Source: Scyliorhinus canicula | Lineage: Eukaryota | NCBI RefSeq assembly: GCF_902713615.1 | Contig: NC_052163.1 | Span: 11,852,248-11,916,247 of the forward strand | Reading direction: 5' to 3' | DNA length: 64,000 bases | Part shown: positions 5,399 through 64,000 of the stretch, in pieces | Numbering within the stretch: position 1 is the first letter of the stretch | How the letters are laid out: each line of letters begins with the position of its first letter | The notes under the pieces: generated by a model | What the model was told of the DNA's origin: nothing | The model's input: the letters and a program-made list of their open reading frames with translations, nothing else | Database searches by the model: none | Position numbers and translations under genes: made by a program

Positions 5399-5459
5399 AT
5401 GTGTCTCCTGCTGGGAGTGACTGGAGTCGGCAAAACCCTGCTGCTGAAGAGACTGTACA
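5399..5459 (+). CDS. ARL16: ARL16 exon 1 (61 nt), ends at a U12 AT donor
   Basis: MCLLLGVTGVGKTLLLKRLY+A then |ATATCCTTC at 5460. Confidence 0.92.
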
Positions 5460-8400
5460 ATATCCTTCAAAATGTCCAAAATCCTTTAAACTGTACAACA
5501 TCCTTAAAACTGTACAACATCCTTAAAACTGTACAACATCCTTTAAACTGTACAATATCCTTTAAACTGTTCAGACTGTCCAATAACCTTTAAACTGTAC
5601 AATATCCTTTAAACTGTGCAGACTGTGTACAATATCCTTTACACTGTACAGACTGTCCAATATCCTTTAAACATTAAAGACTGTCCAATATCCCTTACAC
5701 TGTACAGACTGTCCAATACCCTTTAAACTGTACAGACTGTCCAATACCCTTTAAACTGTACAGACTGTCCAATATCCTTTAAACTGTACAAAATATCCAA
5801 TATCCTTTAAACTGTACAGCCTGTCCAATACCCTTTAAACTGTACAGAGTGTCCAATATCCTTTACACTGTACAGAGTGTCCAATACCCTTTAAACTGTA
5901 CAAACTGTCCAATATCTTTTAAACTGTACAGACTGTACAATATCCTTTAAACTGTACAGACTGTCCAATATCCTTTAAACTGTACAAAATATCCTTTAAA
6001 CTGTACAAAATATCCAATATCCTTTAAACTGTACATACTGTACAATATCCTTTAAACTGTACAGACTACAATATCCTTTACACTGTACAGACTGTCCAAT
6101 ACCCTTTACACTGTACAGTCTGTCCAATATCCTTTAAACTGTACAGACTGTCCAATATTCTTTAAACTGTACACAGTGCAATATCCTTTAAGCTGTACAG
6201 ACTGTCCAATATCCTTTACACTGTACAGACTGTCCAATATCCTTTAAACTGTACAGACTGTCCAATATCCTTTAAACTGTACAAAATATCCAATATCCTT
6301 TAAACTGTACAGCCTGTCCAATACCCTTTAAACTGTACAGAGTGTCCAATATCCTTTACACTGTACAGAGTGTCCAATACCCTTTAAACTGTACAAACTG
6401 TCCAATATCCTTTAAACTGTACAGACTGTACAATATCCTTTAAACTGTACAGACTGTCCAATATCCTTTAAACTGTACAAAATATCCAATATCCTTTAAA
6501 CTGTACAAAATATCCAATATCCTTTAAACTGTACATACTGTACAATATCCTTTAAACTGTACAGACTACAATATCCTTTACACTGTACAGACTGTCCAAT
6601 ACCCTTTACACTGTACAGTCTGTCCAATATCCTTTAAACTGTACAGACTGTCCAATATTCTTTAAACTGTACACAGTGCAATATCCTTTAAGCTGTACAG
6701 ACTGTCCAATATCCTTTACACTGTACAGACTGTCCAATATCCTTTAAACTGTACAGACTGTCCAATATCCTTTACACTGTACAGACTGTCCAATATCCTT
6801 TAAACTGTACAGACTGTCCAATATCCTTTACACTGTACAGAGTGTCCAATACCCTTTAAACTGTACAGACTGTACAATATCCTTTAAACCATAGAGACTC
6901 TCCAATATCCTTTACACTGTACAGTGTGTACAATATCTGTTGAACTGTACAGAGTATACAATATCCTTTAAACCATAGATACTATATAAGATCCTTTAAA
7001 CTACAGAGTCTACAATATCCTTTCACCTGTACAGACTGTCCAATATTCTTTAAACTGTACACAGTGCAATATCCTTTAAGCTGTACAGACTGTCCAATAT
7101 CCTTTACACTGTACAGACTGTCCAATATCCTTTAAACTGTACAGACTGTCCAATATCCTTTACACTGTACAGACTATCCAATATCCTTTAAACTGTACAG
7201 ACTGTCCAATATCCTTTACACTGTACAGAGTGTCCAATACCCTTTAAACTGTACAGACTGTACAATATCCTTTAAACCATAGAGACTCTCCAATATCCTT
7301 TACACTGTACAGTGTGTACAATATTTGTTGAACTGTACAGAGTATACAATATCCTTTAAACCATAGATACTATATAAGATCCTTTAAACTACAGAGTCTA
7401 CAATATCCTTTCACCTGTACAGACTGTACGATATCCTTTAAACTATAGAGACTACAATATTATTTAAACTATACAGGCTGTACAATATCCGTTAACCATA
7501 CAGACTGTACAGTATCCTTTAAATATCATTTTAAATAACATTCAGTCTGTGATTTTAAATAGCTTTCAGTCTGACTGATTTTAAGTAGTATTCTGTCCTA
7601 TGGTAATTTTCAACAGCATTCATTCTGACTGTAATTTAAAATCGCATTTGATCTGATTGTTTTTAAATAGGATTCCGCTTGACTGATTTTAAATAATATT
7701 CAGAATCAGTCTGTTATTTTAAATATCCCTCAGCCTGGGTGTGATTTTAAATTGCATTCAGTCTGATTTTGATTTGAAATAACATTCATTCTGACTGTGA
7801 TTGGAAATAGCATTCAGTCTGACTGTGATTGGAAATAGTATTCAGTCTGACTGTGATTGGAAATAGTATTCAGTCTGACTGTGATTGGAAATAGCATTAA
7901 TTCGGCATGAGACTTTAAATACTATTCAATCTGAATGAGATTTTTTTTTTCTTTTTTTTAAAATTTAGATTAGCCAATTATTTTTTCCAATTAAGGGGCA
8001 ATTTAGCGTGGCCAATCCACCTACTCTGCACATTTTTGGGTTGTGGGGGCGAAACCCACACAGACATGGGGAGAACGTGCAAACTCCACACGGACAGTGA
8101 CCCAGAGCCGGGATCGAACCTGGGACCTCAGCGCCGTGAGGCGGCTGTGCTAACCACTAGGCCACCGTGCTGCCCTCCTGAATGAGATTTTAAATAGCAT
8201 TCAGTCTGGGGGAGATTTTACAAAACTATTAAGTATTTGTGTGCCATTTTTTTGCAACCTCGGGGTTTTCCAAAGTGCTTTAGTCAATGAAGTACTCATG
8301 AAGTATTGTCACTGTTCCAAGCGGAGTGTGATTATAAACTTTACACAAACTATTATTTGCCATGCAAATTGTGTGATTTTAAATACCAGACCACTTGAAA

Positions 8401-11400
8401 CGTGGTATTTTAGAGTGCATGCTATAATTGATGTAATCTATTTGTGTTACTGTGCTGTTACATGTGACTGCGATGAAAGTAATACACGACTCTCTGTTAC
8501 AACAGCTTTCTGCACTTAATATGATTTAATTCTTTTAAAACTGGAACCTTTTTTAGAATTTCGATTGCAGCCCTGGCATTGACTAAGTCAGCACAAACTA
8601 GAGATTGAGCCTGGGGCCTTCCGGACTCAGCTATTTACAGGAGAAATCTGCTGGATTGTAGGAGGCACTTACATCTGCTTCATAAATATGACCCAAAAGT
8701 GTTGGACTATTGCTGCTAAATTGTTCAGTCGATTATTATAGCGCTATAATAAAATGTAAAGTAGCATTTAAGTAACAGCGCACAAAGCAATACCTATAGC
8801 ACCTTTTACATTCCCAGGTTGTCCCAAAGCACCCCACAGCCAATGAGATAAAGTGTATTCACTGTCGTGATGTAGCAAACCAGGCAGCTAATTTATGCAA
8901 AGCAGGATCCCACAGACGGAAACACTGCAATGACCTGATGGTCTGTTGTTGTGATGTTGATTCGGGACACTGCGGATAATTCCACTCTCCTACAAAATAG
9001 CGCAATGGAATCTTTTACAATCAACTGGCGGAGGAGGCGGGGTCTTGTTTACCATCTCTGAAAGATGAGGAAGGAACATTGTCGCTTCTTCCAATAGTTA
9101 AAAATGATGGGTGGCATTCATGTGTCTTAGTGCTTGTCTAATGGTGCAACCATTGGAGGGCTGTGAGGATGTCACTTGCCTGAGACGATGGATGATGGGA
9201 AACTAAAGAGGAGAACTATACTGGAGGAATAAAATCATCAGTGTCGATAAAAATCCACAAAAAGGGAAGACTTGCATTTATATAATGCCTTTCACAACCT
9301 CAGAACTTGTTAAAGTGCTTCACAGGCAATGAAGTAGCTTTGAAGTGTAGTCACTGATGTAAGATAACCAACTTGTCTGCAGCAAAGACTTAAAATCCGA
9401 ATCAGATAGTCTGTTGTAGACTTTGGTTGAGGTACAGACATTGGCCAGGTAGTTCCACTGCTGTTCTTTGAAATAGTACAGTGGGATCTTTCACCCTCAG
9501 CTGAGAGAGAAGACGAGAGCTTGGAGGTTTCATGTTTCATCCAAAAGACGGCACCTCCGACAGTGCAGAGGTCCCTCAGTACAGCACTGGGTACAGCAGT
9601 GGTGTGTCAGCTGAGGGTCCTGTGTTCACTAGTGACTAGTGCCCACAGCCCCCGTAAAGGTGGTACAAGCGACACCAGCTTCATGTGAAGGAGCAGTCAC
9701 TTTCAACTTTGAATATTTAAACACGTCACAGATTGTGAGATGTGAATTTATCCAATTTTAGGCAGACATTCCATATTTTTAAATCCTTGACTGGGATGCA
9801 CAGATGAGTTCGAAAGAAAGCACTGGTGAACTAGGAGAGCCTCCACCCACACTTCCCACGGTACATTCACACTGGCTATCAAATGTGTTCAATAGAAGAC
9901 TCGGGTGGGATTTTCCAGCCCCGCCGATGTCTTCGCCATTTTGTGTGGCTTGACGGCCCCCCACCCCTCTGCCGGCGAGGGGGGGTGGGGATGGGGGGAA
10001 TGGGGGTGTCCCCTTCAGTGGGACTAGAATATCTTGCTGGTGGGAAGGATCGGAAAATCCCGTCCTTTTAGTTAAGGTCTGCTATCCTGGATTTGTTACA
10101 TTTTTTAGAAATATCCATTTAAAAACACTGGATTCAGACGGCAGCATCATGCTTCAATATGTATTATGAGTGGTAATCCTTAGAATGTCCTAAGCGAGGT
10201 GATGGATAACACACATTTTCACCTTGAATCAATCGCAATCTGTCACCGCTTTATCAGCCGTTGCGATTTATGGTGTTTAATTCCCCATTAACCTCTCCTC
10301 ATAAGTTGGCTTCAGCCTCTTCGTCTTTTTAAGGAACTGGCACAGGCTGCTTGAACACAGTGGTTGCTTCAGCTGAATACCATTGTCTTTCACACTGATT
10401 GCTTGACCATCCCCATAGTGTCAGGAGCAGAGAGCAGGCCACCTCAGTACAATTAACATCAATACATTCCAAACACCTTGTTTTAAATTGGGAGAACGTA
10501 GGCAAAAGGGCCGAGGACCATTGGAAAAGCCCCTCGCATTGTTAAACTGCAGCAAAATGCAGAGTGTGGTAAATGAAGACAGGGTGATGAGATGATGCCA
10601 TACCTGTGCTCTCTGAGCTGGCAGCAGAGGTGGGCTGGTACTTGAAGAGCTTGACAATTCGGGAAGGATTGAGTTCCGATGAGAATCTGCAATGAGTCAC
10701 TTGAGAATGTAAATGGCTCAGAGAACATTATAGCGCATATTATAACAGAAATGTTATAGCGCAGAAGGAGGCCATTTGGCCCCTCAGGTCCATTCTAGCT
10801 CTCCAAACGTGCATGCTGACTTAGTGACAATCCCCTGCCTTTTCCCCGTACCCTGCACATCGCTTTTATTCAAATAATCATCTAATGTCCTCTTGAATGC
10901 CTCGATTGAACTTGCCTCCACCACACTTCCAGGCTCGATTCACTCGCTGTGCGAAAAGGTTTTCCTCACATAACATTTGCTTCTTTTGCAAATCACTTTA
11001 AATCTGTGTCCTCTCCTTCTCGATCCTTTTCCGAGCGGGAACAGTTTCTCCCCGTCTACTCTGTCAGCCCCCTCATGATCTTGAACGCCTCTATCAAATC
11101 TCCTCTCACCCCTCTTCTCTCCAAGGAGAATTTAACATTCAATCAACCGCCAGAGTTATTTACAGCGCTGAAGGAGAGCATTTGGCCCATCACGTTCATG
11201 CTGCCCAGCCTCGAGCAGGCCAGTCAGCCCTGGCCCCAGCTCCACCCCTTTGCAGCTTTACCCCCCTCAAGTGACCATCCACTTTCCTTTTGAATTAATT
11301 CATGCCACCACCCGAGCAGGCAGCGTGTTCCAGGTCCCTGTGGAAAAATAGTTCTAGTCAACACCATTTCAAACTTCTTTACCCAGACTGTGAAACTTGT

Positions 11401-36100: not shown

Positions 36101-39100
36101 GAAAGCAAGGAATAAAAGCACCCACAGTTAAAAAAAAAGAAGAAAACACTTTCTCCTAAACTAGGGTTGCCAATTCTGCTTTGACATATTCCTGGAGAAT
36201 GTTTGGAGAGACACATGATCACATGACACATGAATTTGTTCATCGTTTACAAATGTTATTGCGTTTGTTTTAGCAAGTCCTTTAATATTCCTGGGCTCGG
36301 ACTAAAATTTTGACTTAATCTTAATTCAATTGCTCTCAAATCCCACAACGGAATTCCGGGGGATGAATTGCTCGAATCCTGGGGCAGGACACACATTACA
36401 AAGCGAGTTCCAATGATCACAGATCTGTAATGTTGATTGTTTTTCGCTCTCTCTCTCTCTATAGATACTGCCATACCTGCCGAGTACCTCTAGCATTTTC
36501 TGTTTTTTGTTTGTTATGTGCAGAAAATACGGAGGCTGGGGATTGAGGGTGATTTAGAGATGTGGATCAGAAATTGGCTAGTTGAAAGAAGACAGAGAGT
36601 GGTAGTTGATGGAAATGTTCAGAATGGAGTTCAGTTACGAGTGGCGTACCACAAGGATCTGTTCTGGGGCCGTTGCTGTTTGTCATTTTTATAAATGACC
36701 TAGAGGAGGGCGCAGAAGGATGGGTGAGTAAATTTGCAGACGACACTAAAGTCGGTGGAGTTGTAGACAGTGCGGAAGGATATTGCAGGTTACAGAGGGA
36801 CATAGATAAGCTGCAGAGCTGGGCTGAGAGGTGGCAAATGGAGTTTAATGTGGAGAAGTGTGAAGTGATTCACTTTGGAAAGAATAACAGGAATGCGGAA
36901 TATTTGGCTAATGGTAAAATTCTTGGTAGTGTGGATGAGCAGAGGGATCTCGGTGTCCATGTACATAGATCCCTGAAAGTTGCCACCCAGGTTGATAGGG
37001 TTGTGAAGAAGGCCTATGGTGTGTTGGCCTTTATTGGTAGAGGGATTGAGTTCCGGAGCCATGAGGTCATGTTGCAGTTGTACAAAACTCTAGTACGGCC
37101 GCATTTGGAGTATTGCGTACAGTTCTGGTCGCCTCATTATAGGAAGGACGTGGAAGCCTTGGAACGGGTGCAGAGGAGATTTACCAGGATGTTGCCTGGT
37201 ATGGAGGGAAAATCTTATGAGGAAAGGCTGATGGACTCGAGGTTGTTTTCGTTAGAGAGAAGAAGGTTAAGAGGTGACTTAATAGAGGCATACAAAATGA
37301 TAAGAGGGTTAGATAGGGTGGACAGCGAGAGCCTTCTCCCGCGGATGGAGGTGGCTAGCACGAGGGGACATAGCCTTAAATTGAGGGGTAATAGATATAG
37401 GACAGAGGTCAGAGGTGGGTTTTTTACGCAAAGAGTGGTGAGGCCGTGGAATGCCCTACCTGCAACAGTAGTGAACTCGCCAACATTGAGGGCATTTAAA
37501 AGTTTATTGGATAAGCATATGGATGATAAGGGCATAGTGTAGGTTAGATGGCCTTTAGTTTTTTTCCAGGTCGGTGCAACATCGAGGGCCGAAGGGCCTG
37601 TACTGCGCTGTATCGTTCTATGTTCTATACCGCAATGAGAAGCAGTCTCTCCTTCTCCCCATCGTTCAAATTTGTCTTCCCCTCAGTAATTGACATGCAC
37701 AAATCAGGAATGTTTCTTTCAAATCATCAAATATCGCTCGAGGGATCAGTCATTCTGGGAGACACTGGATAAGGAATCTCACAAAACCCAAGGTTTACAC
37801 ACTTGCACCACGTGTGTACAAGTACTGAAATGCCCAACAGTATCCAACCCATTTATTTCAAATGCAAAATGCAACTAGCCAACCTGCGATTGCTCAGTTC
37901 GTGACCAGAGCGCTGGTCAGACCCTGGCAGAAAAGTGGGCTTCATTCTGGAGTAGCTGCTGCTAAGCCAGACGTCCCGACTGCCGGCGAATGGGGAGCTG
38001 CCCCCTCCCCCAACACGGGCAGAGTGACTGGCGTGTGAATGGGGAGCTGCCCCCCCCACGGGCAGAGTGACTGGCGTGTGAATGGGGAGCTGCTCCCCTC
38101 CCGCCCCCTCACAAGGGCAGAGTGACTGGCAGCGAATGGAGAGCTGCCCCCCCCCCCCACCCCCCACAGGCAGAGTGAGTGGCGTGTGAATGGGGAGCTG
38201 CCCCTACAGGCAGAGTGACTGGCGGCGAATGGGGAGCTGCCCCCTCCCCCAACACGGGCAGAGTGACTGGCGTGTGAATGGGGAGCTGCCCCCTCCCCCA
38301 ACACGGGCAGAGTGACTGGCGTGTGAATGGAGAGCTGCCCCCCCCCCCCCCAACGCGGGCAGAGTGACTGGCGTGTGAATGGGGAGCTGCCCCCCCACGG
38401 GCAGAGTGACTGGCGTGTGAATGGGGAGCTGCCCCCCCCACGGGCAGAGTGAGTGGCGTGTGAATGGAGAGCTGCCCCCCCCCCCCCCAACGCGGGCAGA
38501 GTGACTGGCGTGTGAATGGAGAGCTGCCCCCCCACGGGCAGAGTGAGTGGCGTGTGAATGGAGAGCTGCTCCCCCACGGGCAGAGTGACTGGCGGAGAAT
38601 GGAGAGCTGCCCCCCCCACCCAACACGGGCAGAGTGACTGGCGTGTGAATGGAGAGCTGCCCCCCCCCCCAACGTGGGCAGAGTGACTGGCGTGTGAATG
38701 GAGAGCTGCTCCCCCACGGGCAGAGTGACATGGCGGAGAATGGAGAGCTGCAGAGCTGCCCCCCCCCCCCACAGGCAGAGTGACTGGCGTGTGAATGGAG
38801 AGCTGCCCCCCACAGGCAGAGTGACTGGCGTGTGAATGGAGAGCTGCTCCCCTCCCACCCCCCCCCCCCCCCCCCCCCCACCCCACAGGCAGAGTGACTG
38901 GCGGCGAATGGAGAGCTGCCCCCCCCCCACCCCCACAGGCAGAGTGACTGGCGGCGAATGGAGAGCTGCCCCCCCCCCCAACCCCCCCCACCCCCACAGG
39001 CAGAGTGAGTGGCGTGTGAATGGAGAGCTGCCCCCCCCCACGGGCAGAGTGACTGGCGGTGAATGGCGAGCTGCCCCCCCCCCCCCCAGGCAGAGTGACT

Positions 39101-42100
39101 GGCGGTGAATGGAGAGCTGCCCCCCCACGGGCAGAGTGACTAGCGGAGAATGGAGAGCTGCCCCCCCCCCCCCACGGGCAGAGTGACTGGCGTGTGAATT
39201 GAGAGCTGCCCCCCCCCACGGGCAGAGTGACTGGCGTGTGAATGGAGAGCTGCCCCCACCCCCCCCCACGGGCAGAGTGACTGGCGTGTGAATGGAGAGC
39301 TGCCCCCCCCCCACGGGCAGAGTGACTAACGGAGAATGGAGAGCTGCCCCCCCCCCCCACGGGCAGAGTGACTGGCGTGTGAATGGAGAGCTGCCCCCCC
39401 CCCCCCCCCCCACGGGCAGAGTGACTGGCGTGTGAATGGAGAGCTGCCCCCCCCCCCCCCCCCCCACGGGCAGAGTGACTAGCGGTGAATGGAGAGCTGC
39501 CCCCCCCCCCCCCCACACAGGCAGAGTAAGTGGCGTGTGAATGGAGAGCTGCCCCCCCACGGGCAGAGTGACTGGCGTGTGAATGGGGAGCTGCCCCCCC
39601 CACGGGCAGAGTGACTGGCGTGTGAATGGCGAGCTGCCCCCCCCCCCCCCCCCCACGGGCAGAGTGACTAGCGGTGAATGGAGAGCTGCCCCCCCCCCCC
39701 CCCCCCCCACACAGGCAGAGTAAGTGGCGTGTGAATGGAGAGCTGCCCCCCACGGCAGAGTGACTGGCGTGTGAATGGGAGCTGCCCCCCCACGGGCAGA
39801 GTGACTGGCGTGTGAATGGCGAGCTGCCCCCCCCACGGGCAGAGTGACTGGCGTGTGAATGGAGAGCTGCCCCCCCCCCCCCCCCCCCCACGGGCAGAGT
39901 GACTGGCGGAGAATGGAGAGCTGCCCCAACACGGGCAGAGTGAGTGGCGTGTGAATGGCGAGCTGCCCCCCCCCACGGGCAGAGTGACTGGCGGAGATGG
40001 AGAGCTGCCCCCCCACGGGCAGAGTGACTGGCGTGTGAATGGGGAGCTGCCCCCCCCACGGGCAGAGTGAGTGGCGTGTGAATGGAGAGCTGCCCCCCCC
40101 CCCCCACGGGCAGAGTGACTGGCGGAGAATGGAGAGCTGCCCCCCCCCACGGGCAGAGTGACTGGCGTGTGAATGGAGAGCTGCCCCCCCACGGGCAGAG
40201 TGACTGGCGGAGAATGGAGAGCTGCCCCCCCCCCCACGGGCAGAGTGACTGGCGTGTGAATGGAGAGCTGCCCCCCCCCCCCACGGGCAGAGTGACTGGC
40301 GTGTGAATTGAGAGCTGCCCCCCCCCACGGGCAGAGTGACTGGCGTGTGAATGGAGAGCTGCCCCCACCCCCCCCCACGGGCAGAGTGACTGGCGTGTGA
40401 ATGGAGAGCTGCCCCCCCCCCCACGGGCAGAGTGACTAACGGAGAATGGAGAGCTGCCCCCCCCCCCCACGGGCAGAGTGACTGGCGTGTGAAGGGAGAG
40501 CTGCCCCCCCCCCCCCCCCACGGGCAGAGTGACTAGCGGTGAATGGAGAGCTGCCCCCCCCCCCACACAGGCAGAGTAAGTGGCGTGTGAATGGAGAGCT
40601 GCCCCCCCACGGGCAGAGTGACTGGCGTGTGAATGGGGAGCTGCCCCCCCCACGGGCAGAGTGACTGGCGTGTGAATGGCGAGCTGCCCCCCCCACGGGC
40701 AGAGTGACTGGCGTGTGAATGGAGAGCTGCCCCCCCCCCCCACGGGCAGAGTGACTGGCGGAGAATGGAGAGCTGCCCCCAACACGGGCAGAGTGAGTGG
40801 CGTGTGAATGGCGAGCTGCCCCCCCCACGGGCAGAGTGACTGGCGGAGAATGGAGAGCTGCCCCCCCCACGGGCAGAGTGACTGGCGTGTGAATGGGGAG
40901 CTGCCCCCCCCACGGGCAGAGTGAGTGGCGTGTGAATGGAGAGCTGCCCCCCCCCCCACGGGCAGAGTGACTGGCGGAGAATGGAGAGCTGCCCCCCCCC
41001 ACGGGCAGAGTGACTGGCGTGTGAATGGAGAGCTGCCCCCCCACGGGCAGAGTGACTGGCGGAGAATGGAGAGCTGCCCCCCCCCCCCACGGGCAGAGTG
41101 ACTGGCGTGTGAATGGAGAGCTGCCCCCCCCCCCCCCCCCCCCCACGGGCAGAGTGGTGAAACCAGCCCCAGATTTAGATCAAATGCCACCACATCCATT
41201 GAGAAGATGCAACCCTTCAAACTCGTTGGACACGTTAATGTCTCTGATCAGAAATGACAGCTCCCATTGTGGTAAGAGTGGGATGCAATGATTCACAAAC
41301 CTGTCCCGGTAAAGCGGACGATGTTCGAACACACCCTGTTCAGGAACGGCTGGTGGCCGGATTGTTCCGGAAGCTGGTTCTTCATCATTTTCAGCAGCAC
41401 AAGCAGGAAGAGACAGACCAGGCCTAGCACGAGGTCACCGATCCTGCAGCAAGGTGGAGGGCAAAGTAAAGCAATACATGGAAACTGAAACAGAAGGGCC
41501 ACCCAGCCCATCAAGGCTGTGCTAGCTCAAAACCCGTTTTCCTTCTATTCCATTATCACCTAATTTCCTCTTAAAAAGACAAAGATTGACTTGCGCTGTG
41601 GTAACATGCTCCATTTTATCAACTGAAAATAATTCTTCAACCTCCTGCTTAGCGTTTATGGTATTGTTACCGACTTAATTCGACCCCAGTTCCCCAGCAA
41701 CTGTTGGTGATTTACCACCAACCCCCCCCCCCCCCCCCCCCCAACATTGTAGTCAGTTTACCGGCACAAAGAGGCCTTTCAGCCCATCGTGTCTGGGCTA
41801 GCCATCGAGCACCCATTTTCCAGTACTTGGTCCTTGTATGCCATGCCGTTGAGATCGAAATGCTTCCCAAATGTTTCAGGTTCCCACCTCTACCAGCGAG
41901 TTCCAGGTTCCCACCTCCCTCTGGGTGAAAACATTTTTTCTTCAAATCCTCTGCCCCTCACTTTAATCTATGCCCCCTGGTTATTGACCCCTCTACTAAA
42001 GGGGCCCCTGCATAGTTTGTCAGTAAGCCCCTGCCGGCTAGCTCCGCCCACAGGGAGCAGTATAAATATCCATGAGGTCTCCCGAGCTGCCATTTTACAG

Positions 42101-48100: not shown

Positions 48101-48786
48101 GCCTACTCGTGACAATAAGCGATTTTCATTTTTTTTTTTCCACACAGCAAGATCCCACAAATAACAATGTGGCGATAACCAGGTAATCTGTTCTGATCAA
48201 TGTCAACTCTGACACCAGGAAGAACTCTCCTGCTCTTTTGCAAATGGTACCACGGGTACGTTCATGTCCACTTGAAGGCAGACAGTGCCATGGCTGAACG
48301 CCTCCTCTGACAATGCAGCACTCCCTCAGTGTTGCACTGCAAGTGTTGACCCAGACCTTGTTTCTGGAGTGGGACCCGAACCCACAGCCTGCTGGACTCA
48401 GCCGAGTGAGACAGAACTGTGACCCAATGCTTGGGGTAGGGTGGGTCACAGCCTGCTGGACTCAGGCGAGTGAGACAGAGCTGTGACCCAATGCTTGGGG
48501 CAGGGTGGGTCACAGCCTGCTGGACTCAGCCGAGTGAGACAGAGCTGTGACCCAATGCTTGGGGCAGGGTGGGTCACAGCCTGCTGGACTCAGCCGAGTG
48601 AGACAGAGCTGTGACCCAATGCTTGGGGCAGGGTGGGTCACAGCCTGCTGGACTCAGCCGAGTGAGACAGAGCTGTGACCCAATGCTTGGGGCAGGGTGG
48701 GTCACAGCCTGCGATGTCGTTGCTCTGTCAGTCACCACCTCCCATCCCCAAGGAGAGATCATGGGGCAGCAATGGATTGAATTCAG

Positions 48787-48822
<36 letters not shown>

Positions 48823-51800
48823 CTTACCGAGATGCAGGATTCCCATTGCCAGTTGGATGCAGCCACAGAGGAAAGCCAGCAACACAGCGTACACCGGGTC
48901 ATGATAGGCATATGAAGCAACGAGGAGGGACATGATCGCTGTGGGACCCAGAGTGATGTCTTTGGAGGTACCAAGGAAGCAGTACACAAAACAGCCCATG
49001 AATGATGAATAAAGCCCATACTGCACAGAGAGAGAGAGAGATTTTATTCACAGAAAACATCCTTCCCTTCAGGCTGGCAATACAGGATAGAGGTCAGGAC
49101 AGTCGCAGGAGCATCGGGAGGCCATTCAGCCCATCAGGCCTGTCCCAATTTGCCACATCTGTTCTGCAGCTTAACTCCATCCTTACCATTACCACAAAAC
49201 AAAGCATAGTCTGAACTTTAATACAGCTGAATAAAAGTCTACTTACTCTCCTCCCCCTGCAATCCCAGCTCCTGTATAACTGAACACAGCCTCGAGAGTC
49301 ACCCTCCCACCCCAACCCCTACTCCTCCAGGTGCACCAGGCCTCTGTTGGACAGTGTTTTGTTGGTCCAGACTTTGCTCACAAGGCAGCCAACGAGCAAT
49401 CTCCGAGGGGTCTGCCCGAGAAAGGCAAAAGCGGAAACTTATAGAGACCACACGTACTTGTGTAAAAGTTGACTCATGACTTTCAGCTTTAGGAAAAAAA
49501 CGATTTTCAATGACCCAGTATAAAACCAAGAGGGATTTTCCGGGAAAAGTTTCAGAACCAAAGTTTAATCCTGGAAATGTAACCGAGATGATCAAATTGT
49601 AAACGTATAAATAATGAATCAAAGTAAACAAATAAATGTCAGGTAATGGATATGAAATGTGATTGCGACTGTCTTTTGTGATTTCACTTCGGCCCAATCA
49701 AGAACATTGGTCAACCTCGAAATCATTGTCCGTACAAAATTCAACCCGATTTTTGATTATGTCCTAGAAAGACTAGGCTCAAAAAGAAAAAAACCTTTTA
49801 CACAAGTGGATACAGTATTTATGGGATGCCACGGTCAGGGGACAGTTGTAAATATCAGGTCAGTGACCTTGATTTATGCATATTTCCACCCAGGCCCCTC
49901 TGCCAGGGCTCCTTCAGAATTGTACGTACTGTATCTGCATTTTTCTTGCCAAAGTGAGTCACTTCACACGTCTCTGCATTAAAATATCACAGAGAAATAC
50001 AGCAGTTTCTGCTTTGCAGGCGTTCACACGTCCCACACAAGTTTATTCTATTCAAATTATCTTTTGCCCCTGTCCCCATGTTCCCTTCTCCCTCAACAAT
50101 GTGATTTGTTCCAAGATTCCACGTGGCATCGGCACGCTAAGAAATTCCTCCCACATTCTTTATTTGATCTGTCAGCGCGCATCTTTTTTTCCCAAATTTA
50201 GAGTGCCCAATTCTATTTTTTTTTCCCAATTAAGGGGCAATTTAGCGTGGCCAATCCACCTACCCTGCACATCTTTGGGTTGTGGGGGTGTGAGACCCAT
50301 GCAAACACGGGGAGAATGTGCAAACTCCACACGGACAGTGACCCGGGGCCAGGATTGAACCCGGGTCCTCAGCGCCGTGAGGCAGCAATGCTAACCACTG
50401 TGCCACCGTGCCGCCCCGTCAGCGTGCATCCTGCGTGTTTATTACCTCGCTTTGTTCCAGAACACCCTCACCCGTCCAACAGTGTGTTTAGGTCCAAGTG
50501 TAAAATGAAATGAAATGAAATGAAAATCGCTTATTGTCACGAGTAGGCTTCAAATGAAGTTACTGTGAAAAGCCCCTAGTCGCCACATTCCGGCGCCTGT
50601 TCGGGGAGGCTGGTACGGGAATCGAACCGTGCTGCTGGCCTGCTTTCAAAGCCAGTGATTTAGCCCAGTGAGCTAAACCAGCCCCTTGGAGGGTGCCCCT
50701 GAATACCTCTTCAATCAGAATGACTAATCTGCCCGATGTGTACAAACAGAATTGTCATTGGTTTCACGGTGTAGCTCACGGTGCAGCTCACGGTGCAGCT
50801 CACGGTGCAGCTCACGGTGCAGCTCACGGTGCAGCTCACGGTGCAGCTCACGGTGCAGCTCACGGTGCAGCTCACGGTGCAGCTCACGGTGCAGCTCACG
50901 GTGCAGCTCACGGTGCAGCTCACGGTGCAGCTCACGGTGCAGCTCACGGTGCAGCTCACGGTGCAGCTCACGGTGCAGCTCAGAAACACTGGCTGGTGAG
51001 GCCATTCAAAGAGAAAACAGCAGCAAATGTCCAAATTATTAAACTTGTTTAATCTGAAATCAACACTGAACTATCAAAGGTAGACTTTCTACAGTAACTT
51101 TTGACAACCTCAGGACATCTCAAACCAGTTCTACGTAGTCACTGCTGTAATGTAGGAAATTTGGCAGCTATTTTGCACACAGCAAGATCCCACAATGTGA
51201 TACTGACCAACAATCTAAGACACTGGGGATTTCTTTAAAATAGTGCCTTTTGGGGCAGCACGGTGGCACAGTGGTTAGCAGTGTTGCCGACGGCGAGGAG
51301 GACCCGGGTTCGAATCCCGGCCCTGGGTCACTGTCCGTGTGGAGTTTGCACATTCTCCCCGTGTCTCCGTGTGTTTCACCCCCACAACCCAAAAGATGTG
51401 CATGGATTGGCCACGCTAAATTGCCCCCTAATTCGAAAAAAATAATTGGGTACTCTAAATTTATATTTTTTTTTTAAAAAAGTGCCTTGGGATCTTTTGT
51501 ACCCATCCCCCCGCCCCCACCACCCCCTCATCATCCCATCCAGACAGTGGCTCCAACAGCGCAATGCCCCCTCGGTACTGCACTGTGCAGTCCAGGCGCG
51601 AGGTTTGAATGTATGAGTGTGCGGCCAAGTTCCCCCAGAGCTCCAAAATGTGGCTGTTTCTTTCTCCACAGATGCTGAAGCATTTCTCGTTTTAAAAAAA
51701 AACATTGAAACCCCACCCCAAAAACCTTTTCCCCTCCCTCAAGAGCCGGCCTGGATTAATCCCATACGAGAGGTGCCTACCTGAACAGGGAGCCCAGCTA

Positions 51801-53110: not shown

Positions 53111-53111
53111 G

Positions 53112-55443: not shown

Positions 55444-55531
55444 ATGTTGCCAATCTGCATTCTGTTACTGACAGCAGTGGCTAATTCCTGCGGGGCGAAA
55501 CAGCAGAGGCGGAACCTGCTCCTCATCATTG
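55444..55531 (+). CDS. SGSH: SGSH exon 1
   Basis: [29 protein letters not shown] |gtgagt. Confidence 0.92.
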
Positions 55532-58500
55532 GTGAGTGGACCATTCCTATTTTCCTCCTTCCACCCCCCTCCCCATGGTCTTCTCCAATGATTACAATGC
55601 CTTTACAGCATAGTAACAGGCCATTCGGCCCAACTGCTCCATGTTGGTCCATTCCAACCTACTCACACCTCACCCTATCAGATTCACCTTCGATACCCTT
55701 GTCCCTCGTGTTGATCTGTCTTCCCCACAAGCACATCTGGCCCTGGAATTGCCAACGTGCCGGTCCTGCTCCTGGGCTCCAGCACCAGAATCCAGGCTAA
55801 CTTTGCAGAGTCCTGATGTGGAGATGCCAGCGTTGGACTGGGGTGGGCAGAGTAAGAAGCCTTACTAACACCAGGTTAAAGTCCAACAGCTTTGTTTCGA
55901 ATCACTAGCTTTTGGAGCGCTGCTCCTCAGAGGAAGGAGCTGCGCTCCGAAGGCTAGTGATTCGAAACAAACCTGTTGGACTTTAACCTGGTGTTGTAAG
56001 ATTTCTGGAGTCCAACAGAAGAGTTAGGAGCAGAGTAGGCAATTCAGACCCTTTGAGCCTCCTCCGCCATTCAATCAGATCACGGCTGATCATGTGCTGG
56101 TTTCAAATCCACCTACCTATCTGTTCCCCATATCCCTTTAACCCATGGGGGTGCTGTGCTACCAAGGGTGGTATGGGGGAGGGGGCAGGGGTAGTGGAGG
56201 GGGGCAGTGCTGCCAGGGGGGGTTGTTCAATGTGATTGGCGAGCGTAGTTTAGATTGTACTCACTGACAATGATTTGCTTTTCAATAATCTCTCCATTGT
56301 GTGTGCTGTGACAGCTGATGACGCTGGCTTTGAGACTGAGGTGTATAACAACACTGCCATCAGGACCCCGAACCTCAACCAATTGGCAAAACGCAGCGTC
56401 ATCTTCCGAAATGCCTTCTCGTCCGTCAGCAGCTGCTCGCCCAGTCGTTCTGCCATTTTAACAGGCCTGCCACAGGTACGGACACTGACCCTCCGCCATT
56501 TTAACTGGCCTGTCACAGGTACGGACACTGACCCTCCGCCATTTTAACTGGCCTGTCGCAGGTACGGACACTGACCCTCCGCCATTTAAAAAAATTTAGA
56601 GTACCCAATTATTTTTTCCCAGTTAAGGGGCAATCTAGCGTGGCCAATCCATCTAACCTGCACATCTTTGGGTTGTGGGGGTGAGACCCACGCAGACACG
56701 GGGAGAACGAGCAAACTCCATTTTGTGAGGGGCACGAAGAATCCAGCCCGAGTTTTCAGGATACAAAGAAAAAAACATTTATTTACAATAACATATATAC
56801 AGCAGCAACAACTTCCCTTGCTGCTCACTCCTCTCTCTCTGCTGGTTCCAAACTGGCCAGCTCTATTTATGCAGGGAGTCTGCTAATGATTTCTCTGCCC
56901 CCCTCATTGGGGAAGCTCATACTCCCACAGGATTGTGGGATTGTCATTAGTCTCCAGCCAATGGTAAGCAGGCAGGTTGTAACACTCCACACGGACAGTG
57001 ACCCGGGGCTGGGATTGAACCCGGGTCCTCGGCGCCGTGTGGCAGCAGTGCTAACCACTGCGTCACCGTACCGCCCCACCCTCCACCATTTTAACTGGCC
57101 TCCCAGTGGTATGTTCGCTGACTAAATGTTAACCTCCGGCTCCAGTCACTGCTGTGTTTAGCGGATCACCACAGCCCTGAAAGTTGGGTCAAAGCTTTTG
57201 CTGGTTGTCTACAAGGAGGGCGTCCAGTTCCCGTCGCTCACTTAACGAATGCTTTAAGCAGGTTCTAGCAGTATTTACGTCACCCGCACCGGGGACATAC
57301 ATCTGAGACTTGGAGCCCTCCGTTCACAAACAGCCCGGGTCCAGTGGGCCCTTTTTCTGAGTGAGGCAGTTGGGGTTTTGGGGATGTGAAGTAAAGCTGG
57401 CTCGATGGAGTTGAGGTGACGATCGAGCAAGGTTGATGCAAGAGGCTGGCTGGGCAGCTCTGAGGGGCTGAATGGCCTCCACCTTGATGGCAGTTTTGTG
57501 CTCGGTGAGATGTTGTGATTGATGTTGTGACCCCGGGGAGGAAAGAATCAGCCTTGTGTCCTCTTCCCCCCCCCCCCCCCCCCAGAGGACGCAGGCCACC
57601 CTGTGTAGAGACCCCCTCCGTGGCCACATTTATTTATAATATTGATTTTTGAAGCCTCCATTTCAAGGTGCGCTCGCCCGCCCCTTCCTACCCTACCTCT
57701 GCTCACTCCCCTTCTGGGAAAAACTGTGCCAGTGTGCAGTAGTCGGGCTCCGTCAAGGACCCAAGAAGAAATGCTGGAAAATCTCAGCAGGTCTGGCAGC
57801 ATCTGCAGGGAGAGAAAAGAGCTAACGTTTCAAGTCCAGGTGACTCTTTGTCAAAGCTAACATCAAGGACCTGGAAATAGCGCTTGCCCGGGTTTAGAAA
57901 CAAAGCAATAAGATTGGGGACCGAGTGGAGCTCAGTACCTGACAAGACAGTCTGTGCGGGTTACATGTAGCGTTAACTGAAATGGAGAGAGGTTTTGAGG
58001 ATGCGAGGGTGATTGATTGGCTGGGTTTGTGATTGCAGCATCAGAATGGGATGTATGGACTGCATCAGGCTGTTCACCATTTCAATTCCTTCGACACTGT
58101 CAGAAGTTTGCCATTTCTGCTCAGACAGTCACAGATCAGGACAGGTAAGGGTTTGGACATTGGCACAGAGACTCCATTTCTAAAATGCTTTCAACTTTCA
58201 CTCTGTTTAAAATGTTACCTGAATCCCACTTCTTTCACAGCGAATAACATACTCCCACGCCGCGTCTTGCCCTGCCTGTGACACGTTACTGCACCATGTG
58301 TTACCCTGCGTGTGACATGCTACTGCACCATGTTACCTTGCACGCGACACACTCCTGCCCCGTGTGTTAGCCTGCGTGACATGCTCCTGCCTGCGTGTGG
58401 CATACCCCTGCCCTTGCCCCATGTGTTGCCCTGTATGTAGAATGCCCCTGCCCGCTGTTTGCCTGGCGTGTGGCACGTCCGTTTCCCGTGTATTATTAGG

Positions 58501-61500
58501 TATTTATCCCCGATTCTTGTGGAGATGTGACATTGCTTAAGACATCATTGAAAGTTGCCCCTCTGTTAATTCGTTGAACTGTAAATTCCCTTTGCTGCAA
58601 ATATTAATCTGTCTTCACAAATACTCTTTTATGTTTTCGGTCTCAATTATAATTTGTAGTTTTATTTATTTTTCTATATGTACGGCCTGGCCCCGAATGA
58701 CCATTGTTCCTCTCGTTTCTCCTCATTTATTTTGATCATTCAGTTGTACTCTTTTTCAGGAATAATCGGGAAGAAGCACATTGGCCCTGAATCGGTCTAT
58801 CCCTTCGATTATTCAGAGACGGAAGAAAACCATTCTATCCTGCAGGTGGGGAGGAATATCACAAAAATCAAACTGCTCGTCCGGGAGTTCCTGCACAGCA
58901 CCGGAGACAGGTATAACCTCCCAACACCGGAGACAGGTATAACCCCAACACCGGAGACAGGTATAACCTCCCAACACCGGAGACAGGTATAACCTCCCAA
59001 CACCGGAGACAGGTATAACCTCCCAACACCGGAGACAGGTATAACCTCCCAACACCGGAGACAGGTATAACCTCCCAACACCGGAGACAGGTATAACCCC
59101 AACACCGGAGACAGGTATAACCCGGGCAGCTCCCAACACCGGAGACAGGTATAACCCGGGCACCTCCCAACACTGGAGACAGGTATAACCTCCCAACACC
59201 GGAGACAGGTATAACCTCCCAACACCGGAGACAGGTATAACCCCAACACCGGAGACAGGTATAACCCGGGCAGCTCCCAACACCGGAGACAGGTATAACC
59301 CGGGCACCTCCCAACACTGGAGACAGGTATAACCTCCCAACACCGGAGACAGGTATAACCTCCCAACACCGAGACAGGTATAACCTCCCAACACCGGAGA
59401 CAGGTATAACCCCAACACCGGAGACAGGTATAACCCCAACACCGGGGACAGGTATAACCTCCCAACACCGGGGACAGGTATAACCTCCCAACACCGGAGA
59501 CAGGTATAACCCCAACACCGGAGACAGGTATAACCCCAACACCGGAGACAGGTATAACCTCCCAACACCGGAGACAGGTATAACCTCCCAACACCGGAGA
59601 CAGGTATAACCTCCCAACACCGGAGACAGGTATAACCTCCCAACACCGGAGAAAGGTATAACCTCCCAACACCGGAGACAGGTATAACCTCCCAACACCG
59701 GAGACAGGTATAACCCCAACACCGGAGACAGGTATAACCTCCCAACACCGGAGACAGGTATAACCTCCCAACACCGGAGACAGGTATAACCCCAACACCA
59801 GGAGACAGGTATAACCCCAACACCGGAGACAGGTATAACCTCCCATCACCGGAGACAGGTATAACCACCCAACACCGGAGACAGGTATAACCTCCCAACA
59901 CCGGAGACAGGTGTAACCTCCCAGCACCGGAGACAGGTGTAACCTCCCAACACCGGAGACAGGTATAACCTCCCAACACCGGAGACAGGTATAACCCGGG
60001 CAGCTCCCAACACCGGGGACAGGTATAACCTCCGAGCACCGGAGACAGGTGTAACCTCCCAGCACCGGAGACAGGTATAACCCGGGCAGCTCCCAACACC
60101 GGGGACAGGTATAACCTCCCAACACCGGGGACAGGTATAACCTCCCAACACCGGAGACAGGTATAACCTCCCAACACCGGAGACAGGTATAACCTCCCAG
60201 CACCGGAGACACGTATAACCTCCCAACACCGGAGACAGGTATAACCTCCCAGCACCGGAGACAGGTATAACCTCCCAACACCGGAGACAGGTATAACCTC
60301 CCAACACCAGAGACAGGTATAACCTCCCAATACCGGAGACAGGTATAACCTCCCAACACCGGAGACAGGTATAACCCGGGCAGCTCCCAACACCGGGGAC
60401 AGGTATAACCTCCCAACACCGGGGACAGGTATAACCTCCCAACACCGGAGACAGGTATAACCTCCCATCACCGGAGACAGGTATAACCACCCAACACCGG
60501 AGACAGGTATAACCTCCCAACACCGGAGACAGGTATAACCTCCCAACACCGGAGACAGGTATAACCTCCCAACACCGGAGACAGGTATAACCCGGGCAGC
60601 TCCCAACACCGGGGACAGGTATAACCTCCGAGCACCGGAGACAGGTGTAACCTCCCAGCACCGGAGACAGGTATAACCCGGGCAGCTCCCAACACCGGGG
60701 ACAGGTATAACCTCCCAACACCGGGGACAGGTATAACCTCCCAACACCGGAGACAGGTATAACCTCCCAACACCGGAGACAGGTATAACCTCCCAATACC
60801 GGAGACAGGTATAACCTCCCAACACCGGGGACAGGTATAACCTCCCAACACCGGAGACAGGTATAACCCCAACACCGGAGACAGGTATAACCCCAACACC
60901 GGAGACAGGTATAACCCCAACACCGGAGACAGGTATAACCTCCCAGCACCGGAGACACGTATAACCTCCCAGCACCGGAGACAGGTATAACCTCCCAACA
61001 CCGGAGACAGGTATAACCTCCCAACACCAGAGACAGGTATAACCTCCCAATACCGGAGACAGGTATAACCTCCCAACACCGGAGACAGGTATAACCTCCC
61101 AACACCGGAGACAGGTATAACCCGTGCAGCTCCCAACACCGGAGACAGGTATAACCTCCCAACACCGGAGACAGGTGTAACCTCCCAGCACCGGAGACAG
61201 GTATAACCTCCCAGCACCGGAGACAGGTATAACCTCCCAACACCGGGGACAGGTATAACCTCCCAACACCGGAGACAGGTGTAACCTCCCAGCACCGGAG
61301 ACAGGTATAACCCGGGCAGCTCCCAACACCGGGGACAGGTATAACCTCCCAACACCGGGGACAGGTATAACCTCCCAACACCGGAGACAGGTGTAACCTC
61401 CCAGCACCGGAGACAGGTATAACCTCCCAGCACCGGAGACAGGTATAACCTCCCAACACCGGGGACAGGTATAACCTCCCAACACCGGAGACAGGTATAA

Positions 61501-63758
61501 CCCGGGCAGCTCCCAACACCGGAGACAGGTATAACCTCCCAACACCGGAGACAGGTATAACCTCCCAACACCGGAGACAGGTATAACCTCCCAACACCGG
61601 CAACAGGTATAACCTCCCAACACCGGAGACAGGTATAACCTCCCAACACCGGAGACAGGTATAACCTCCCAACACCGGGGACAGGTATAACCTCCCAACA
61701 CCGGGGACAGGTATAACCCCAACACCGGAGACAGGTATAACCCCAACACCGGAGACAGGTATAACCTCCCAGCACCGGAGACGGGTATAATCCCAACACC
61801 GGAGACAGGTATAACCTCCCAGCACCGGAGACAGGTATAACCCCAACACCAGAGACAGGTATAACCTCCCAGCACCAGAGACAGGTATAACCTCCCAACA
61901 CCGGAGACAGGTATAACCTCCCAACACCGGAGACAGGTATAACCTCCCAACACCGGGGACAGGTATAACCTCCCAGCACCGGAGACAGGTATTACCTCCC
62001 AACACCGGAGACAGGTATAACCTCCCAACACCGGAGACGGGTATAACCCCAGCACCGGAGACAGGTATAACCTCCCAACACCGGAGACAGGTATAACCTC
62101 CCAACACCGGAGACAGGTATAACCTCCCAACACCGGGGACAGGTATAACCTCCCAGCACCGGAGACAGGTATAACCTCCCAGCACCGGAGACAGGTATAA
62201 CCCGGGCAGCTCCCAACGCCTCCAGTTTCATTGATCCAAATCTCACAGCAGCCTCGGGGGAGGACGGGGCAGTGTGTCCGAATCCTGGGTTTGGGGGGAT
62301 GTAGAGATCTACCTTGCGAACACTAAAACTCAGTTGAAATTTGAGTTAACACATCGGTGCAAACAAGAATTGTTTATTGCCTCTGTTTGATCACAATTGA
62401 GAATCACTTAAATCTTATACTCTAACAGGTCTGGCTGGCAAAAGGACCCAAAGAGAAGTAATTTGTAGACAATTTAACTTTCAAATGATACAGAAATGAT
62501 TTTTTTCCTTACGGCAAACAGTTTGCATTTACTTCAAGAGTTAGAGTGGAAAAGTGAAAATGTAGAGATAGAGAATAGTTTCAATCAAAGTATGGAATGA
62601 TCCAGGATAAAGATGGCTGTACGGACTATCAGAGTTATACTAAATAATGTCAGTCTTTAGCCATCTAGCTACACCCCTATGTAATCCTATTTGGTTTGGG
62701 TTAAAACCAAATGAGTTTGATTTGATGGTTAGCTGTCAGTCTTTAATGTGCAACATTAACTTGAAATGTTTCATAAATGAATTCTTGTACGTGTTATGGA
62801 ATGCGATTTTCTGCTGTTATCGCGACTGGCTTGAACTGACATCTTGCTGACTTAGCTGTTATCAACATTGAGAACATTTGGGGGCCTCACGGTAGCATGG
62901 TGGTTAGCATCAATGCTTCACAGCTCCAGGGTCCCAGGTTCGATTCCCGGCTGGGTCACTGTCTGTGTGGAGTCTGCACGTCCTCCCTGTGTGTGCGTGG
63001 GTTTCCTCCGGGTGCTCCGGTTTCCTCCCACAGTCCAAAGATGTGCGGGTTAGGTGGATTGGCCATGCTAAATTGCCCGTAGTGTAAGGTTAATGGGGGA
63101 TTGTTGGGTTACGGGTATACGGGTTACGTGGGTTTAAGTAGGGTGATCATTGCTCGGCACAACATCGAGGGCCGAAGGGCCTGTTCTGTGCTGTACTGTT
63201 CTATAAATTCTATAAAACAATGGTGCCTTGATATTACCATGTTGTTGCTATGCTGTTGCCATAGAGCCTGCCCTGTCCTTGGACACTGTCTTGTCAAAGT
63301 GTTTGTTTTAATCTATCAGGTTCTTCTGTGTTTCTGTTGAATTGTGTGTTTTCTACATCATTTAAATTTGTGAATTTAAATTTGTGCGGTGTCATGCTGT
63401 TTTGTAAGCAGTATGTTTTGAGATGACCTGAGGTTGAGTGAATGTAAAATGGGTATTTAGTAAGACGGGGGTTAATGTTTAGCTAACTTTTACCTGTTAG
63501 GTGTGTTAGAAAACAGTTGGTGTCTACAGGGGGGTGGGCTCTGGGCGATTCTCCCAGTGTCTCAGGCACCCCGTTTATCTCTCTCTGCTTTTTATTTCTA
63601 GGCCATTCTTCCTATACGTTGCCTTCCATGACCCGCACCGGTGCGGACATTCCCACCCCCAGTACGGGAACTTCTGTGAGAAGTTTGGGAATGGGGAGAG
63701 TGGAATGGGCTGGATTCCAGACTGGCAGCCACAGCATTACACATCGGAGCAGGTCAAG
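55444..63758 (+). CDS. SGSH: SGSH (N-sulfoglucosamine sulfohydrolase, sulfamidase), 5' part: join(55444..55531,56315..56475,58039..58144,58760..58910,63602..63758); continues right of the window
   Basis: Signal peptide, NLLLIIADDAGFE, sulfatase formylglycine motif [47 protein letters not shown]; exon sizes 88/161/106/151/157 in phase. Confidence 0.97.
55814..56000. mobile_element. Penelope-like terminal-repeat derivative forming a ~140-bp inverted repeat (55861-56000)
   Basis: AACACCAGGTTAAAGTCCAACAG...GAATCACTAGC arm and its reverse complement; central degenerate hammerhead-like cores. Confidence 0.65.
56315..56475 (+). CDS. SGSH: SGSH exon 2 (contains the CSPSR active-site motif at 56434-56448)
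   Basis: (A)[20 protein letters not shown]...[16 protein letters not shown] |gtacgg. Confidence 0.97.
56449..56588 (+). repeat. 43-bp tandem triplication of the SGSH exon 2 end plus donor
   Basis: CAG|GTACGG at 56476, 56519 and 56562. Confidence 0.92.
56724..56983 (-). mobile_element. Solo-LTR-like element nested in a SINE in SGSH intron 2
   Basis: TGT...ACA termini; minus-strand ATAAATA and AATAAA; interrupts the SINE at AAACTCCA/CTCCACACGG. Confidence 0.55.
58039..58144 (+). CDS. SGSH: SGSH exon 3
   Basis: [35 protein letters not shown] |gtaagg. Confidence 0.97.
58760..58910 (+). CDS. SGSH: SGSH exon 4
   Basis: (G)[49 protein letters not shown](R) |gtataa. Confidence 0.96.
58899..62217 (+). 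repeat. 3.3-kb minisatellite of the SGSH exon 4 junction (26-bp unit CACCGGAGACAG|GTATAACCTCCCAA, with 24- and 34-bp variants), ~125 copies
   Basis: First unit overlaps the last 12 nt of exon 4. Confidence 0.97.
62880..63203 (+). mobile_element. HE1/V-SINE-type SINE
   Basis: Same architecture; identical 61-aa pseudo-ORF to the copy at 53245-53430 except one residue. Confidence 0.9.
63602..63758 (+). CDS. SGSH: SGSH exon 5
   Basis: [52 protein letters not shown] |gtaaga. Confidence 0.97.
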
Positions 63759-63777
63759 GTAAGAATAGGGACAAACC

Positions 63778-64000
63778 GTCACACACAGTCACACTGAGAG
63801 TGACACAGTCACACACAGTCACACTGAGGGTGACACAGTCACACTGAGAGTGACACAGTCACATACAGTCACACTGAGGGTGACACAGTCACATACAGTC
63901 ACACTGAGGGTGACACAGTCACACACAGTCACACTGAGAGTGACACAGTCACACACAGTCACACTGAGGGTGACACAGTCACACACAGTCACACTGAGGG
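63778..64000. repeat. 20/30-bp minisatellite (GTCACACACAGTCACACTGAGRGTGACACA) starting 20 nt after the SGSH exon 5 donor, runs off the window
   Basis: Direct inspection. Confidence 0.93.

What the first reader, a model, noticed from the sequence alone, without database searches (positions are those of the whole stretch)
5450..64000. Window-wide pattern: minisatellites are polarised to the 5' (donor) ends of introns in transcript orientation, on both strands
Seen: arrays begin 0 nt (ARL16 exon 1, SGSH exons 2 and 4), 20 nt (SGSH exon 5), ~80 nt (SLC26A11 exon 14), ~116 nt (SLC26A11 exon 2) and ~144 nt (SLC26A11 exon 5) downstream of donors. Their units are unrelated to each other. Exceptions are the 34-mer before ARL16 exon 4, the 12-mer at 50764 and the promoter array. 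Inference: a transcription- or splicing-coupled mutational process (pausing, R-loops or break repair at exon-intron boundaries), or selection, seeds tandem amplification at donors in this lineage. This would be an unappreciated route to intron expansion and decoy splice sites.
Basis: partly seen in the sequence, partly recalled or inferred. Interest (0 to 1): 0.7.

Follow-up and report, generated by a model that had tools for sequence, protein, structure and literature searches.

The report
Splice-donor minisatellites clustered in three shark genes
In this catshark region, three tandem repeats are copies of an exon end plus its splice donor, a repeat type already known from human genes. This makes the repeats look crowded at intron starts, but the other repeats show no secure bias, so a general donor-driven process is not shown.

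Summary
The window holds catshark ARL16 (+), SLC26A11 (-) and SGSH (+). Minisatellites make up 18.7% of it.

**What holds up**
- Three arrays start 8, 24 and 12 nt inside the exon (ARL16 exon 1, SGSH exons 2 and 4), not at 0 nt. Their unit is therefore the exon end plus the donor.
- These arrays carry 50 U12-type donors, 3 CAGGTACGG donors and 112 CAGGTATAA donors.
- RNA assemblies from two studies use only the first SGSH donor.

**Statistics**
- Placed at random within their own introns, the ten developed arrays are skewed to the donor side (P about 0.007).
- That signal comes from the three junction arrays (P about 0.003 for three or more).
- The other seven are not significantly skewed (P = 0.18).
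- One "donor-side" array simply fills a 974-nt intron.
- Microsatellites and two-copy repeats are spread evenly.

**Mechanism**
- I found no G skew of the kind that favours R-loops.
- Growth is not anchored at the donor end.
- The other units are unrelated to their junctions.

**Best reading**
These are F7-type boundary minisatellites in a repeat-rich region. They are tolerated because the first donor is chosen.

The scan has already noted such donor arrays at ten or more other genes of this genome.

The parts
5399..5459 (+). ARL16 coding exon 1. It ends in phase 1 directly before the U12-type donor ATATCCTT at 5460.
   Evidence: intron termini are AT-AC, a TCCTTGAC branch site lies about 12 nt before the AC at 9800-9801, and the reading frame continues into exon 2. 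Human ARL16 is listed as a minor-intron gene (PMC13216214).
5452..7523 (+). 19/28-nt array whose unit contains the ARL16 exon 1 end plus the U12 donor. It holds 50 copies of ATATCCTT. The first intact decoy is at 5555; nearer units read ACATCCTT.
   Evidence: Only 2 copies of the motif occur in the rest of the window, both strands counted.
7539..7943 (+). Adjoining degenerate 28/84-nt array. Together with the previous array it fills 57% of ARL16 intron 1 (5460-9801).
   Evidence: 70-74% matches.
15195..15333 (+). 34-nt array, 4.1 copies, 50 nt before the acceptor of ARL16 exon 4. This is an exception to the pattern.
   Evidence: relative position 0.985.
22651..23408 (-). 42-nt array, 18 copies, in SLC26A11 intron 14 (23487-22514). 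It fills 78% of the intron, with 79 nt to the donor and 137 nt to the acceptor.
38007..41144 (-). 43-nt G/C-rich array, about 68 copies, in SLC26A11 intron 5 (41300-34516), 156-168 nt after the donor. Its unit is unrelated to the junction.
48383..48712 (-). 64-nt array, 5.2 copies, in SLC26A11 intron 2, 115 nt after the donor at 48827. A (CT)15 tract lies between donor and array.
50764..50982 (-). 12-nt array, 18 copies, in SLC26A11 intron 1, 798 nt after the donor (relative position 0.31).
56452..56587 (+). 43-nt array, 3.2 copies: the last 24 nt of SGSH exon 2, the donor CAG|GTACGG and 19 nt of intron. The exon ends at 56475.
   Evidence: RNA contigs of two studies join 56475 to 58039, which is the first donor.
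58270..58390 (+). Weak 34-nt array, 3.3 copies, 70-74% matches, in SGSH intron 3, 125 nt after the donor.
58899..62202 (+). 26-nt array, about 125 copies: the last 12 nt of SGSH exon 4 plus the donor CAG|GTATAA. It holds 112 intact CAGGTATAA and fills 70% of intron 4 (58911-63601).
   Evidence: RNA contigs leave the genome at 58910/11, which is the first donor. The exon 4/5 junction matches the conserved ...DR|PFF... junction.
63778..64000 (+). 30-nt array starting 19 nt after the SGSH exon 5 donor (AAG|GTAAGA at 63759). It runs off the window, and its unit is unrelated to the junction.
4277..5301 (+). 25-nt G-rich array 98 nt upstream of the ARL16 ATG. It is not intronic and so lies outside the pattern.

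Best explanation
The apparent polarity has two separate sources.

(1) The region is very rich in minisatellites. Three of them arose as tandem duplications of a short segment that happened to include an exon end and its 5' splice site: two U2-type sites and one U12-type site. Such duplications are harmless, because splicing joins the first donor and removes the other copies with the intron. Duplications inside exons, or across acceptors, are mostly purged. The survivors then grew by ordinary internal unequal exchange or slippage, to as many as 125 copies. This is the known F7-type boundary minisatellite.

(2) The remaining arrays are ordinary intronic minisatellites. Their mild lean towards donors is within chance for seven arrays.

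What is shown: the anatomy, use of the first donor in SGSH, the statistics, and the absence of R-loop-type composition and of donor-anchored growth.

What is inferred: the tolerance filter, and the purging of acceptor-side and exonic duplications.
For: - The units contain the junction.
- RNA contigs from two studies use the first of 3 donors at SGSH exon 2 and the first of about 113 at exon 4.
- The skew disappears without the straddlers (P = 0.18).
- Small repeats are spread evenly.
- Units of the arrays that do not straddle a donor are unrelated to their junctions.
- Arrays are most homogeneous inside and degenerate at the edges, as in ordinary unequal-exchange arrays.
- There is no G skew on the transcript strand.
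- Human precedents exist, together with the rule that the most upstream donor is chosen (PMC1557585).
- 18.7% of the window is minisatellite.
- The scan's notes list 16 donor findings against 1 acceptor finding in this genome. These notes are unchecked.
Against: - A filter alone removes arrays elsewhere. It does not raise the density at donors above that of intron interiors, yet 3 straddlers are seen where 0.37 are expected (P = 0.003).
- With a post-hoc cut-off of 170 nt or less, 4 of the 7 arrays that do not straddle a donor lie near donors against 1.5 expected (P = 0.015). SGSH intron 5 adds a fifth, at 19 nt.
- Both U2-type and U12-type donors are affected. This points to the function of the site, not to a sequence motif.
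- Other windows also carry two donor arrays side by side (PDCD11 and TAF5; MHC class I).
- Contigs drop rare variants, so minor use of decoy donors is not excluded.
Confidence: 0.6

Rival explanations
1. A mutational process coupled to transcription or splicing seeds or drives tandem amplification at 5' splice sites in this lineage. Candidates are polymerase pausing, R-loops, or break repair at exon-intron boundaries.
For: - Straddlers exceed the expectation under even placement (3 against 0.37).
- Five further arrays lie 19-168 nt after donors.
- Donors of both spliceosomes are involved.
- Many donor arrays are noted elsewhere in this genome (unchecked).
Against: - Arrays are C-skewed or neutral on the transcript strand, not G-rich as R-loop formers are.
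- Homogeneity does not rise towards the donor.
- Two-copy and micro repeats, the expected early products, are spread evenly.
- Arrays that do not straddle a donor share nothing with their junctions.
- The per-window P value is weakened because many windows have been read.
Confidence: 0.15
2. The arrays are kept by selection because rows of U1 or U11 binding sites are useful. They might protect long, transposon-laden introns from premature cleavage and polyadenylation. They might strengthen the upstream donor. For the U12 array, they might act like a giant U11-binding splicing enhancer that regulates ARL16.
For: - 112 of about 125 units in SGSH and 50 units in ARL16 keep an intact donor core.
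- Tandem U12 5' splice sites are a known regulatory element in the U11-48K and U11/U12-65K genes. PMC5473595 (abstract) describes U11 binding to a conserved enhancer. That this enhancer consists of tandem sites is my own knowledge.
Against: - Motif retention is expected anyway in young, homogenised arrays.
- Unit lengths of 26, 28 and 43 nt shift the reading frame if a decoy is used.
- No alternative isoform appears in the RNA contigs.
- Most introns here, including long ones, have no such array.
- Conservation across species could not be tested.
Confidence: 0.1
3. The donor-proximal arrays that do not straddle a donor are old donor-seeded arrays. Their edge units have decayed into a spacer and their core units have drifted, so all donor-side arrays share one origin.
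For: Array edges are the least homogeneous parts. The spacers are short, at 19-168 nt.
Against: Neither the spacers nor the exon ends show significant similarity to the unit consensus. The only hit merely extends the boundary of the intron 5 array.
Confidence: 0.08

Closest known systems
Boundary-spanning minisatellites of human genes: F7 IVS7 (37 bp), IFI6/6-16 intron 2, CBS IVS13, LMNB2 and PDGF intron 4 (PMC1557585)
   Same: The first unit spans the exon-intron boundary, so the authentic donor is followed by identical pseudo-donors. The most upstream donor is the one used (SGSH).
   Different: - Copy numbers are far higher here (about 72 and 125, against 5-25).
- Three such arrays sit within 59 kb.
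- One is built on a U12-type AT-AC donor.
- Copy-number polymorphism was not tested here.
U11 snRNP-binding splicing enhancer (tandem U12-type 5' splice sites in the U11-48K and U11/U12-65K genes)
   Same: The ARL16 array carries tandem copies of the U12 5' splice-site core: 50 copies of ATATCCTT.
   Different: The known enhancer has two deeply conserved copies and a shown regulatory output. Here there is a 2-kb unstable-looking array directly behind a real donor, and neither conservation nor any output was tested.
Human hypervariable minisatellites with polar mutation next to a recombination hotspot (MS32 and CEB1 type; my own knowledge)
   Same: They are minisatellites with 10-64-nt units, clustered regionally. 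The human orthologues of these genes lie near a chromosome end (my own knowledge).
   Different: No polarity of homogeneity towards the exon-side end was seen. Germline mutation data are lacking.
Intron gain by tandem duplication across an AGGT proto-splice site (Rogers model; my own knowledge)
   Same: A tandem duplication that includes splice-site sequence yields extra intronic material that is spliced out.
   Different: Here an existing intron is lengthened from its existing donor. No new intron is created.

Membership tests
F7-type boundary-spanning minisatellite | Tandem array of three or more units | tested here: met
   3.2, about 72 and about 125 copies.
F7-type boundary-spanning minisatellite | The first unit spans the exon-intron boundary, so the authentic donor is repeated in the intron | tested here: met
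   Met for three arrays: 5452, 56452 and 58899 start 8, 24 and 12 nt inside the exon. Not met for the other intronic arrays.
F7-type boundary-spanning minisatellite | The most upstream donor is the one used | tested here: met
   SGSH exons 2 and 4, in RNA contigs of two studies. ARL16 was not tested. Contigs cannot exclude rare use of decoys.
F7-type boundary-spanning minisatellite | Copy number varies between individuals | not tested
U12-type (AT-AC) intron, ARL16 intron 1 | 5' splice site ATATCCTT, a TCCTTRAY branch site 10-15 nt before the 3' end, and AT-AC termini | tested here: met
   Human ARL16 is a minor-intron gene.
R-loop-prone transcribed repeat | G-rich (positive GC skew) on the non-template, transcript-sense strand | tested here: not met
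   skew runs from -0.41 to +0.12. The three junction arrays are at -0.41, -0.25 and -0.23.
Hotspot-driven polar minisatellite | Turnover concentrated at one end of the array | tested here: inconclusive
   The only proxy available was homogeneity along the array, which shows no rise towards the donor end. Germline mutation data cannot be obtained with these tools.
   Only this window of the genome is readable. Scan notes give 16 donor findings against 1 acceptor finding, but they are unchecked and biased by what readers report.

The most novel reading that the evidence does not exclude
In the catshark, and perhaps in elasmobranchs generally, 5' splice sites of both the major and the minor spliceosome act as preferred seeds or growth points for minisatellites, beyond what tolerance alone allows. 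This would be a lineage-specific, splicing-linked route of intron expansion that leaves hundreds of decoy donors.
Probability: 0.2. Interest if true: 0.75.

Novelty: new member of a known kind. Interest (0 to 1): 0.42.

Why it matters
If donor-junction arrays prove to be common in shark genomes, three things follow.
- They are a measurable source of intron growth. Here they make up about half to three quarters of four introns.
- They are natural test cases for how the spliceosome picks one site among up to 125 identical ones, including a U12-type series, for which I found no description.
- They matter for gene annotation, because decoy donors can mislead gene predictors.

As it stands, the window shows a cluster of a known repeat type. 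It does not show a new mutational process.

Tried and rejected
- **GT donor for ARL16 exon 1.** I first read the donor as CT|GTACAA. That gives a stop codon after splicing. The AT-AC reading, a lead from scan note s1-240114, gives a frame collinear with the orthologue.
- **Comparison with other species.** Full-length SLC26A11 relatives were either not on record or came from an intron-less transcript contig. The closest SGSH exon 4 fragment sits on a 67-kb contig whose DNA could not be served. Two others proved to be invertebrate genes with tiny introns and no arrays. Orthologous shark introns were therefore not compared.
- **Literature.** Searches for a described genome-wide donor bias of tandem repeats, for shark intron minisatellites, and for U12 donor arrays found nothing relevant.
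- **Exon joining.** Exons were searched singly by reference, and phases were checked by arithmetic only.
- **Mammalian hits.** Some proteins look mammalian. I fetched no contig for them.
Full report
**Locus**

- The window holds three genes. Scan notes place it in the small-spotted catshark.
- ARL16 lies on the + strand, with 5 coding exons from 5399 to 16228.
- SLC26A11 lies on the - strand, with 15 coding exons from 51966 to 22426.
- SGSH lies on the + strand, with exons 1-5 from 55444 to 63758, and runs off the window.
- SLC26A11 exons were placed with tblastn, using full-length relatives found with one exon as query. One of those relatives carries the Sulfate_transp and STAS domains.
- SGSH and ARL16 exons were read from conserved peptides and splice sites.
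- All 22 complete introns are GT-AG except ARL16 intron 1, and exon phases are consistent.
- RNA assemblies from two studies lie on 56314-56475, 58039-58144 and 58760-58910/11 with GT..AG joints.

**The arrays**

- Tandem Repeats Finder gives 13 arrays with period of 10 or more and 3 or more copies. Lowering the score threshold adds none.
- Together they cover 11,977 nt, which is 18.7% of the window.
- Distances from the donor in transcript orientation are listed in the observation check.
The three \"0 nt\" arrays in fact begin 8, 24 and 12 nt inside the exon, so their unit is the exon end plus the donor.
- ARL16 intron 1 is U12-type. It has an A|ATATCCTT donor, a TCCTTGAC branch site about 12 nt before the terminal AC, and a frame collinear with the orthologue. 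Human ARL16 is a minor-intron gene (PMC13216214).
- The ARL16 array holds 50 copies of ATATCCTT, against 2 in the rest of the window.
- The SGSH arrays hold 3 copies of CAGGTACGG and 112 copies of CAGGTATAA.

**Is the polarity more than chance?**

- Each array was placed at random within its own intron.
- The ten arrays in introns of known length have a mean relative position of 0.28 (P = 0.007).
- Three or more arrays containing a donor has P = 0.003 against 0.37 expected.
- Without those three, the other seven give P = 0.18 by relative position.
- Only a post-hoc cut-off of 170 nt or less gives P = 0.015.
- The SLC26A11 intron 14 array fills 78% of a 974-nt intron and is almost as close to the acceptor as to the donor.
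- As a control, 32 microsatellites, homopolymers and two-copy repeats are spread evenly along the introns (mean 0.57).
- The scan has read 1348 windows of this genome, so a per-window P of 0.003 could arise a few times by chance.

**Mechanism tests**

- *First donor.* The assembled SGSH mRNA in two studies uses the first donor at exon 2 and at exon 4. Contigs cannot exclude rare use of decoys.
- *R-loops.* No array is G-rich on the transcript strand.
- *Donor-anchored growth.* Homogeneity is highest inside the arrays and lower at both edges, including the donor edge. This is what ordinary unequal exchange produces.
- *Common origin.* The units of arrays that do not straddle a donor match neither their exon ends nor their spacers.
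- *Unit relatedness.* Units are mostly unrelated to each other, with one weak similarity between the two non-junction SGSH units.

**Comparison with what is known**

- Minisatellites whose first unit spans an exon-intron boundary are described for human F7, IFI6, CBS, LMNB2 and PDGF. In F7 only the most upstream donor is used (PMC1557585).
- The three junction arrays meet the tested features of that class.
- I found no paper describing a genome-wide donor bias, shark intron minisatellites, or an array of U12 donors.
- The scan's own notes list similar donor arrays at FPGT, LAMTOR1, MHC class I, PDCD11, TAF5, ZFYVE1-like and HEI10.
- By word count those notes give 16 donor findings against 1 acceptor finding (ERGIC3). 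They are unchecked and biased by what readers report.

**Verdict**

Its statistical weight rests on three boundary minisatellites of a known kind.
- A tolerance filter (first donor chosen; acceptor-side and exonic duplications purged) in a very repeat-rich region explains the asymmetry between donors and acceptors.
- That filter does not by itself explain why junction arrays exceed the expectation under even placement in this window.
- Whether that excess reflects clustering, looking at many windows, or a true donor-linked bias needs the genome-wide count.

Noticed in passing
window 5460-5555: The units nearest the real ARL16 U12 donor read ACATCCTT, which is disabled at position +2. The first intact ATATCCTT decoy lies 95 nt downstream, as if the closest decoys had been disarmed.
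   Followed up: partly
window 4277-5301: A 25-nt G-rich array rich in GGGTTG, about 41 copies, ends 98 nt upstream of the ARL16 start codon. It could form four-stranded DNA on the sense strand.
   Followed up: no
   Followed up: partly
window 56588-56780, 56976-57072, 57752-57848: SINE-like dispersed repeats in SGSH intron 2 draw enormous RNA word depth and many chimeric joints from copies elsewhere in the genome.
   Followed up: no
window 48790-48819 and 30579-30601: In transcript orientation, a (CT)15 tract starts 8 nt after the SLC26A11 exon 2 donor and a G23 run lies 52 nt after the exon 9 donor.
   Followed up: no
window 58956-59011: One 56-nt low-depth RNA contig lies inside the SGSH decoy array. 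It could be unspliced RNA or rare use of a decoy donor.
   Followed up: no
window 19559-20934 and 36673-37542: Reverse-transcriptase open reading frames of LINE-like elements lie on the + strand. One is downstream of the last mapped SLC26A11 coding exon and the other is inside intron 5. Both are antisense to the gene.
   Followed up: no
window 51966-55444: SLC26A11 and SGSH lie head to head about 3.5 kb apart, with a (GT)24 tract at 52353-52400. As I recall, the human orthologues have the same arrangement.
   Followed up: no
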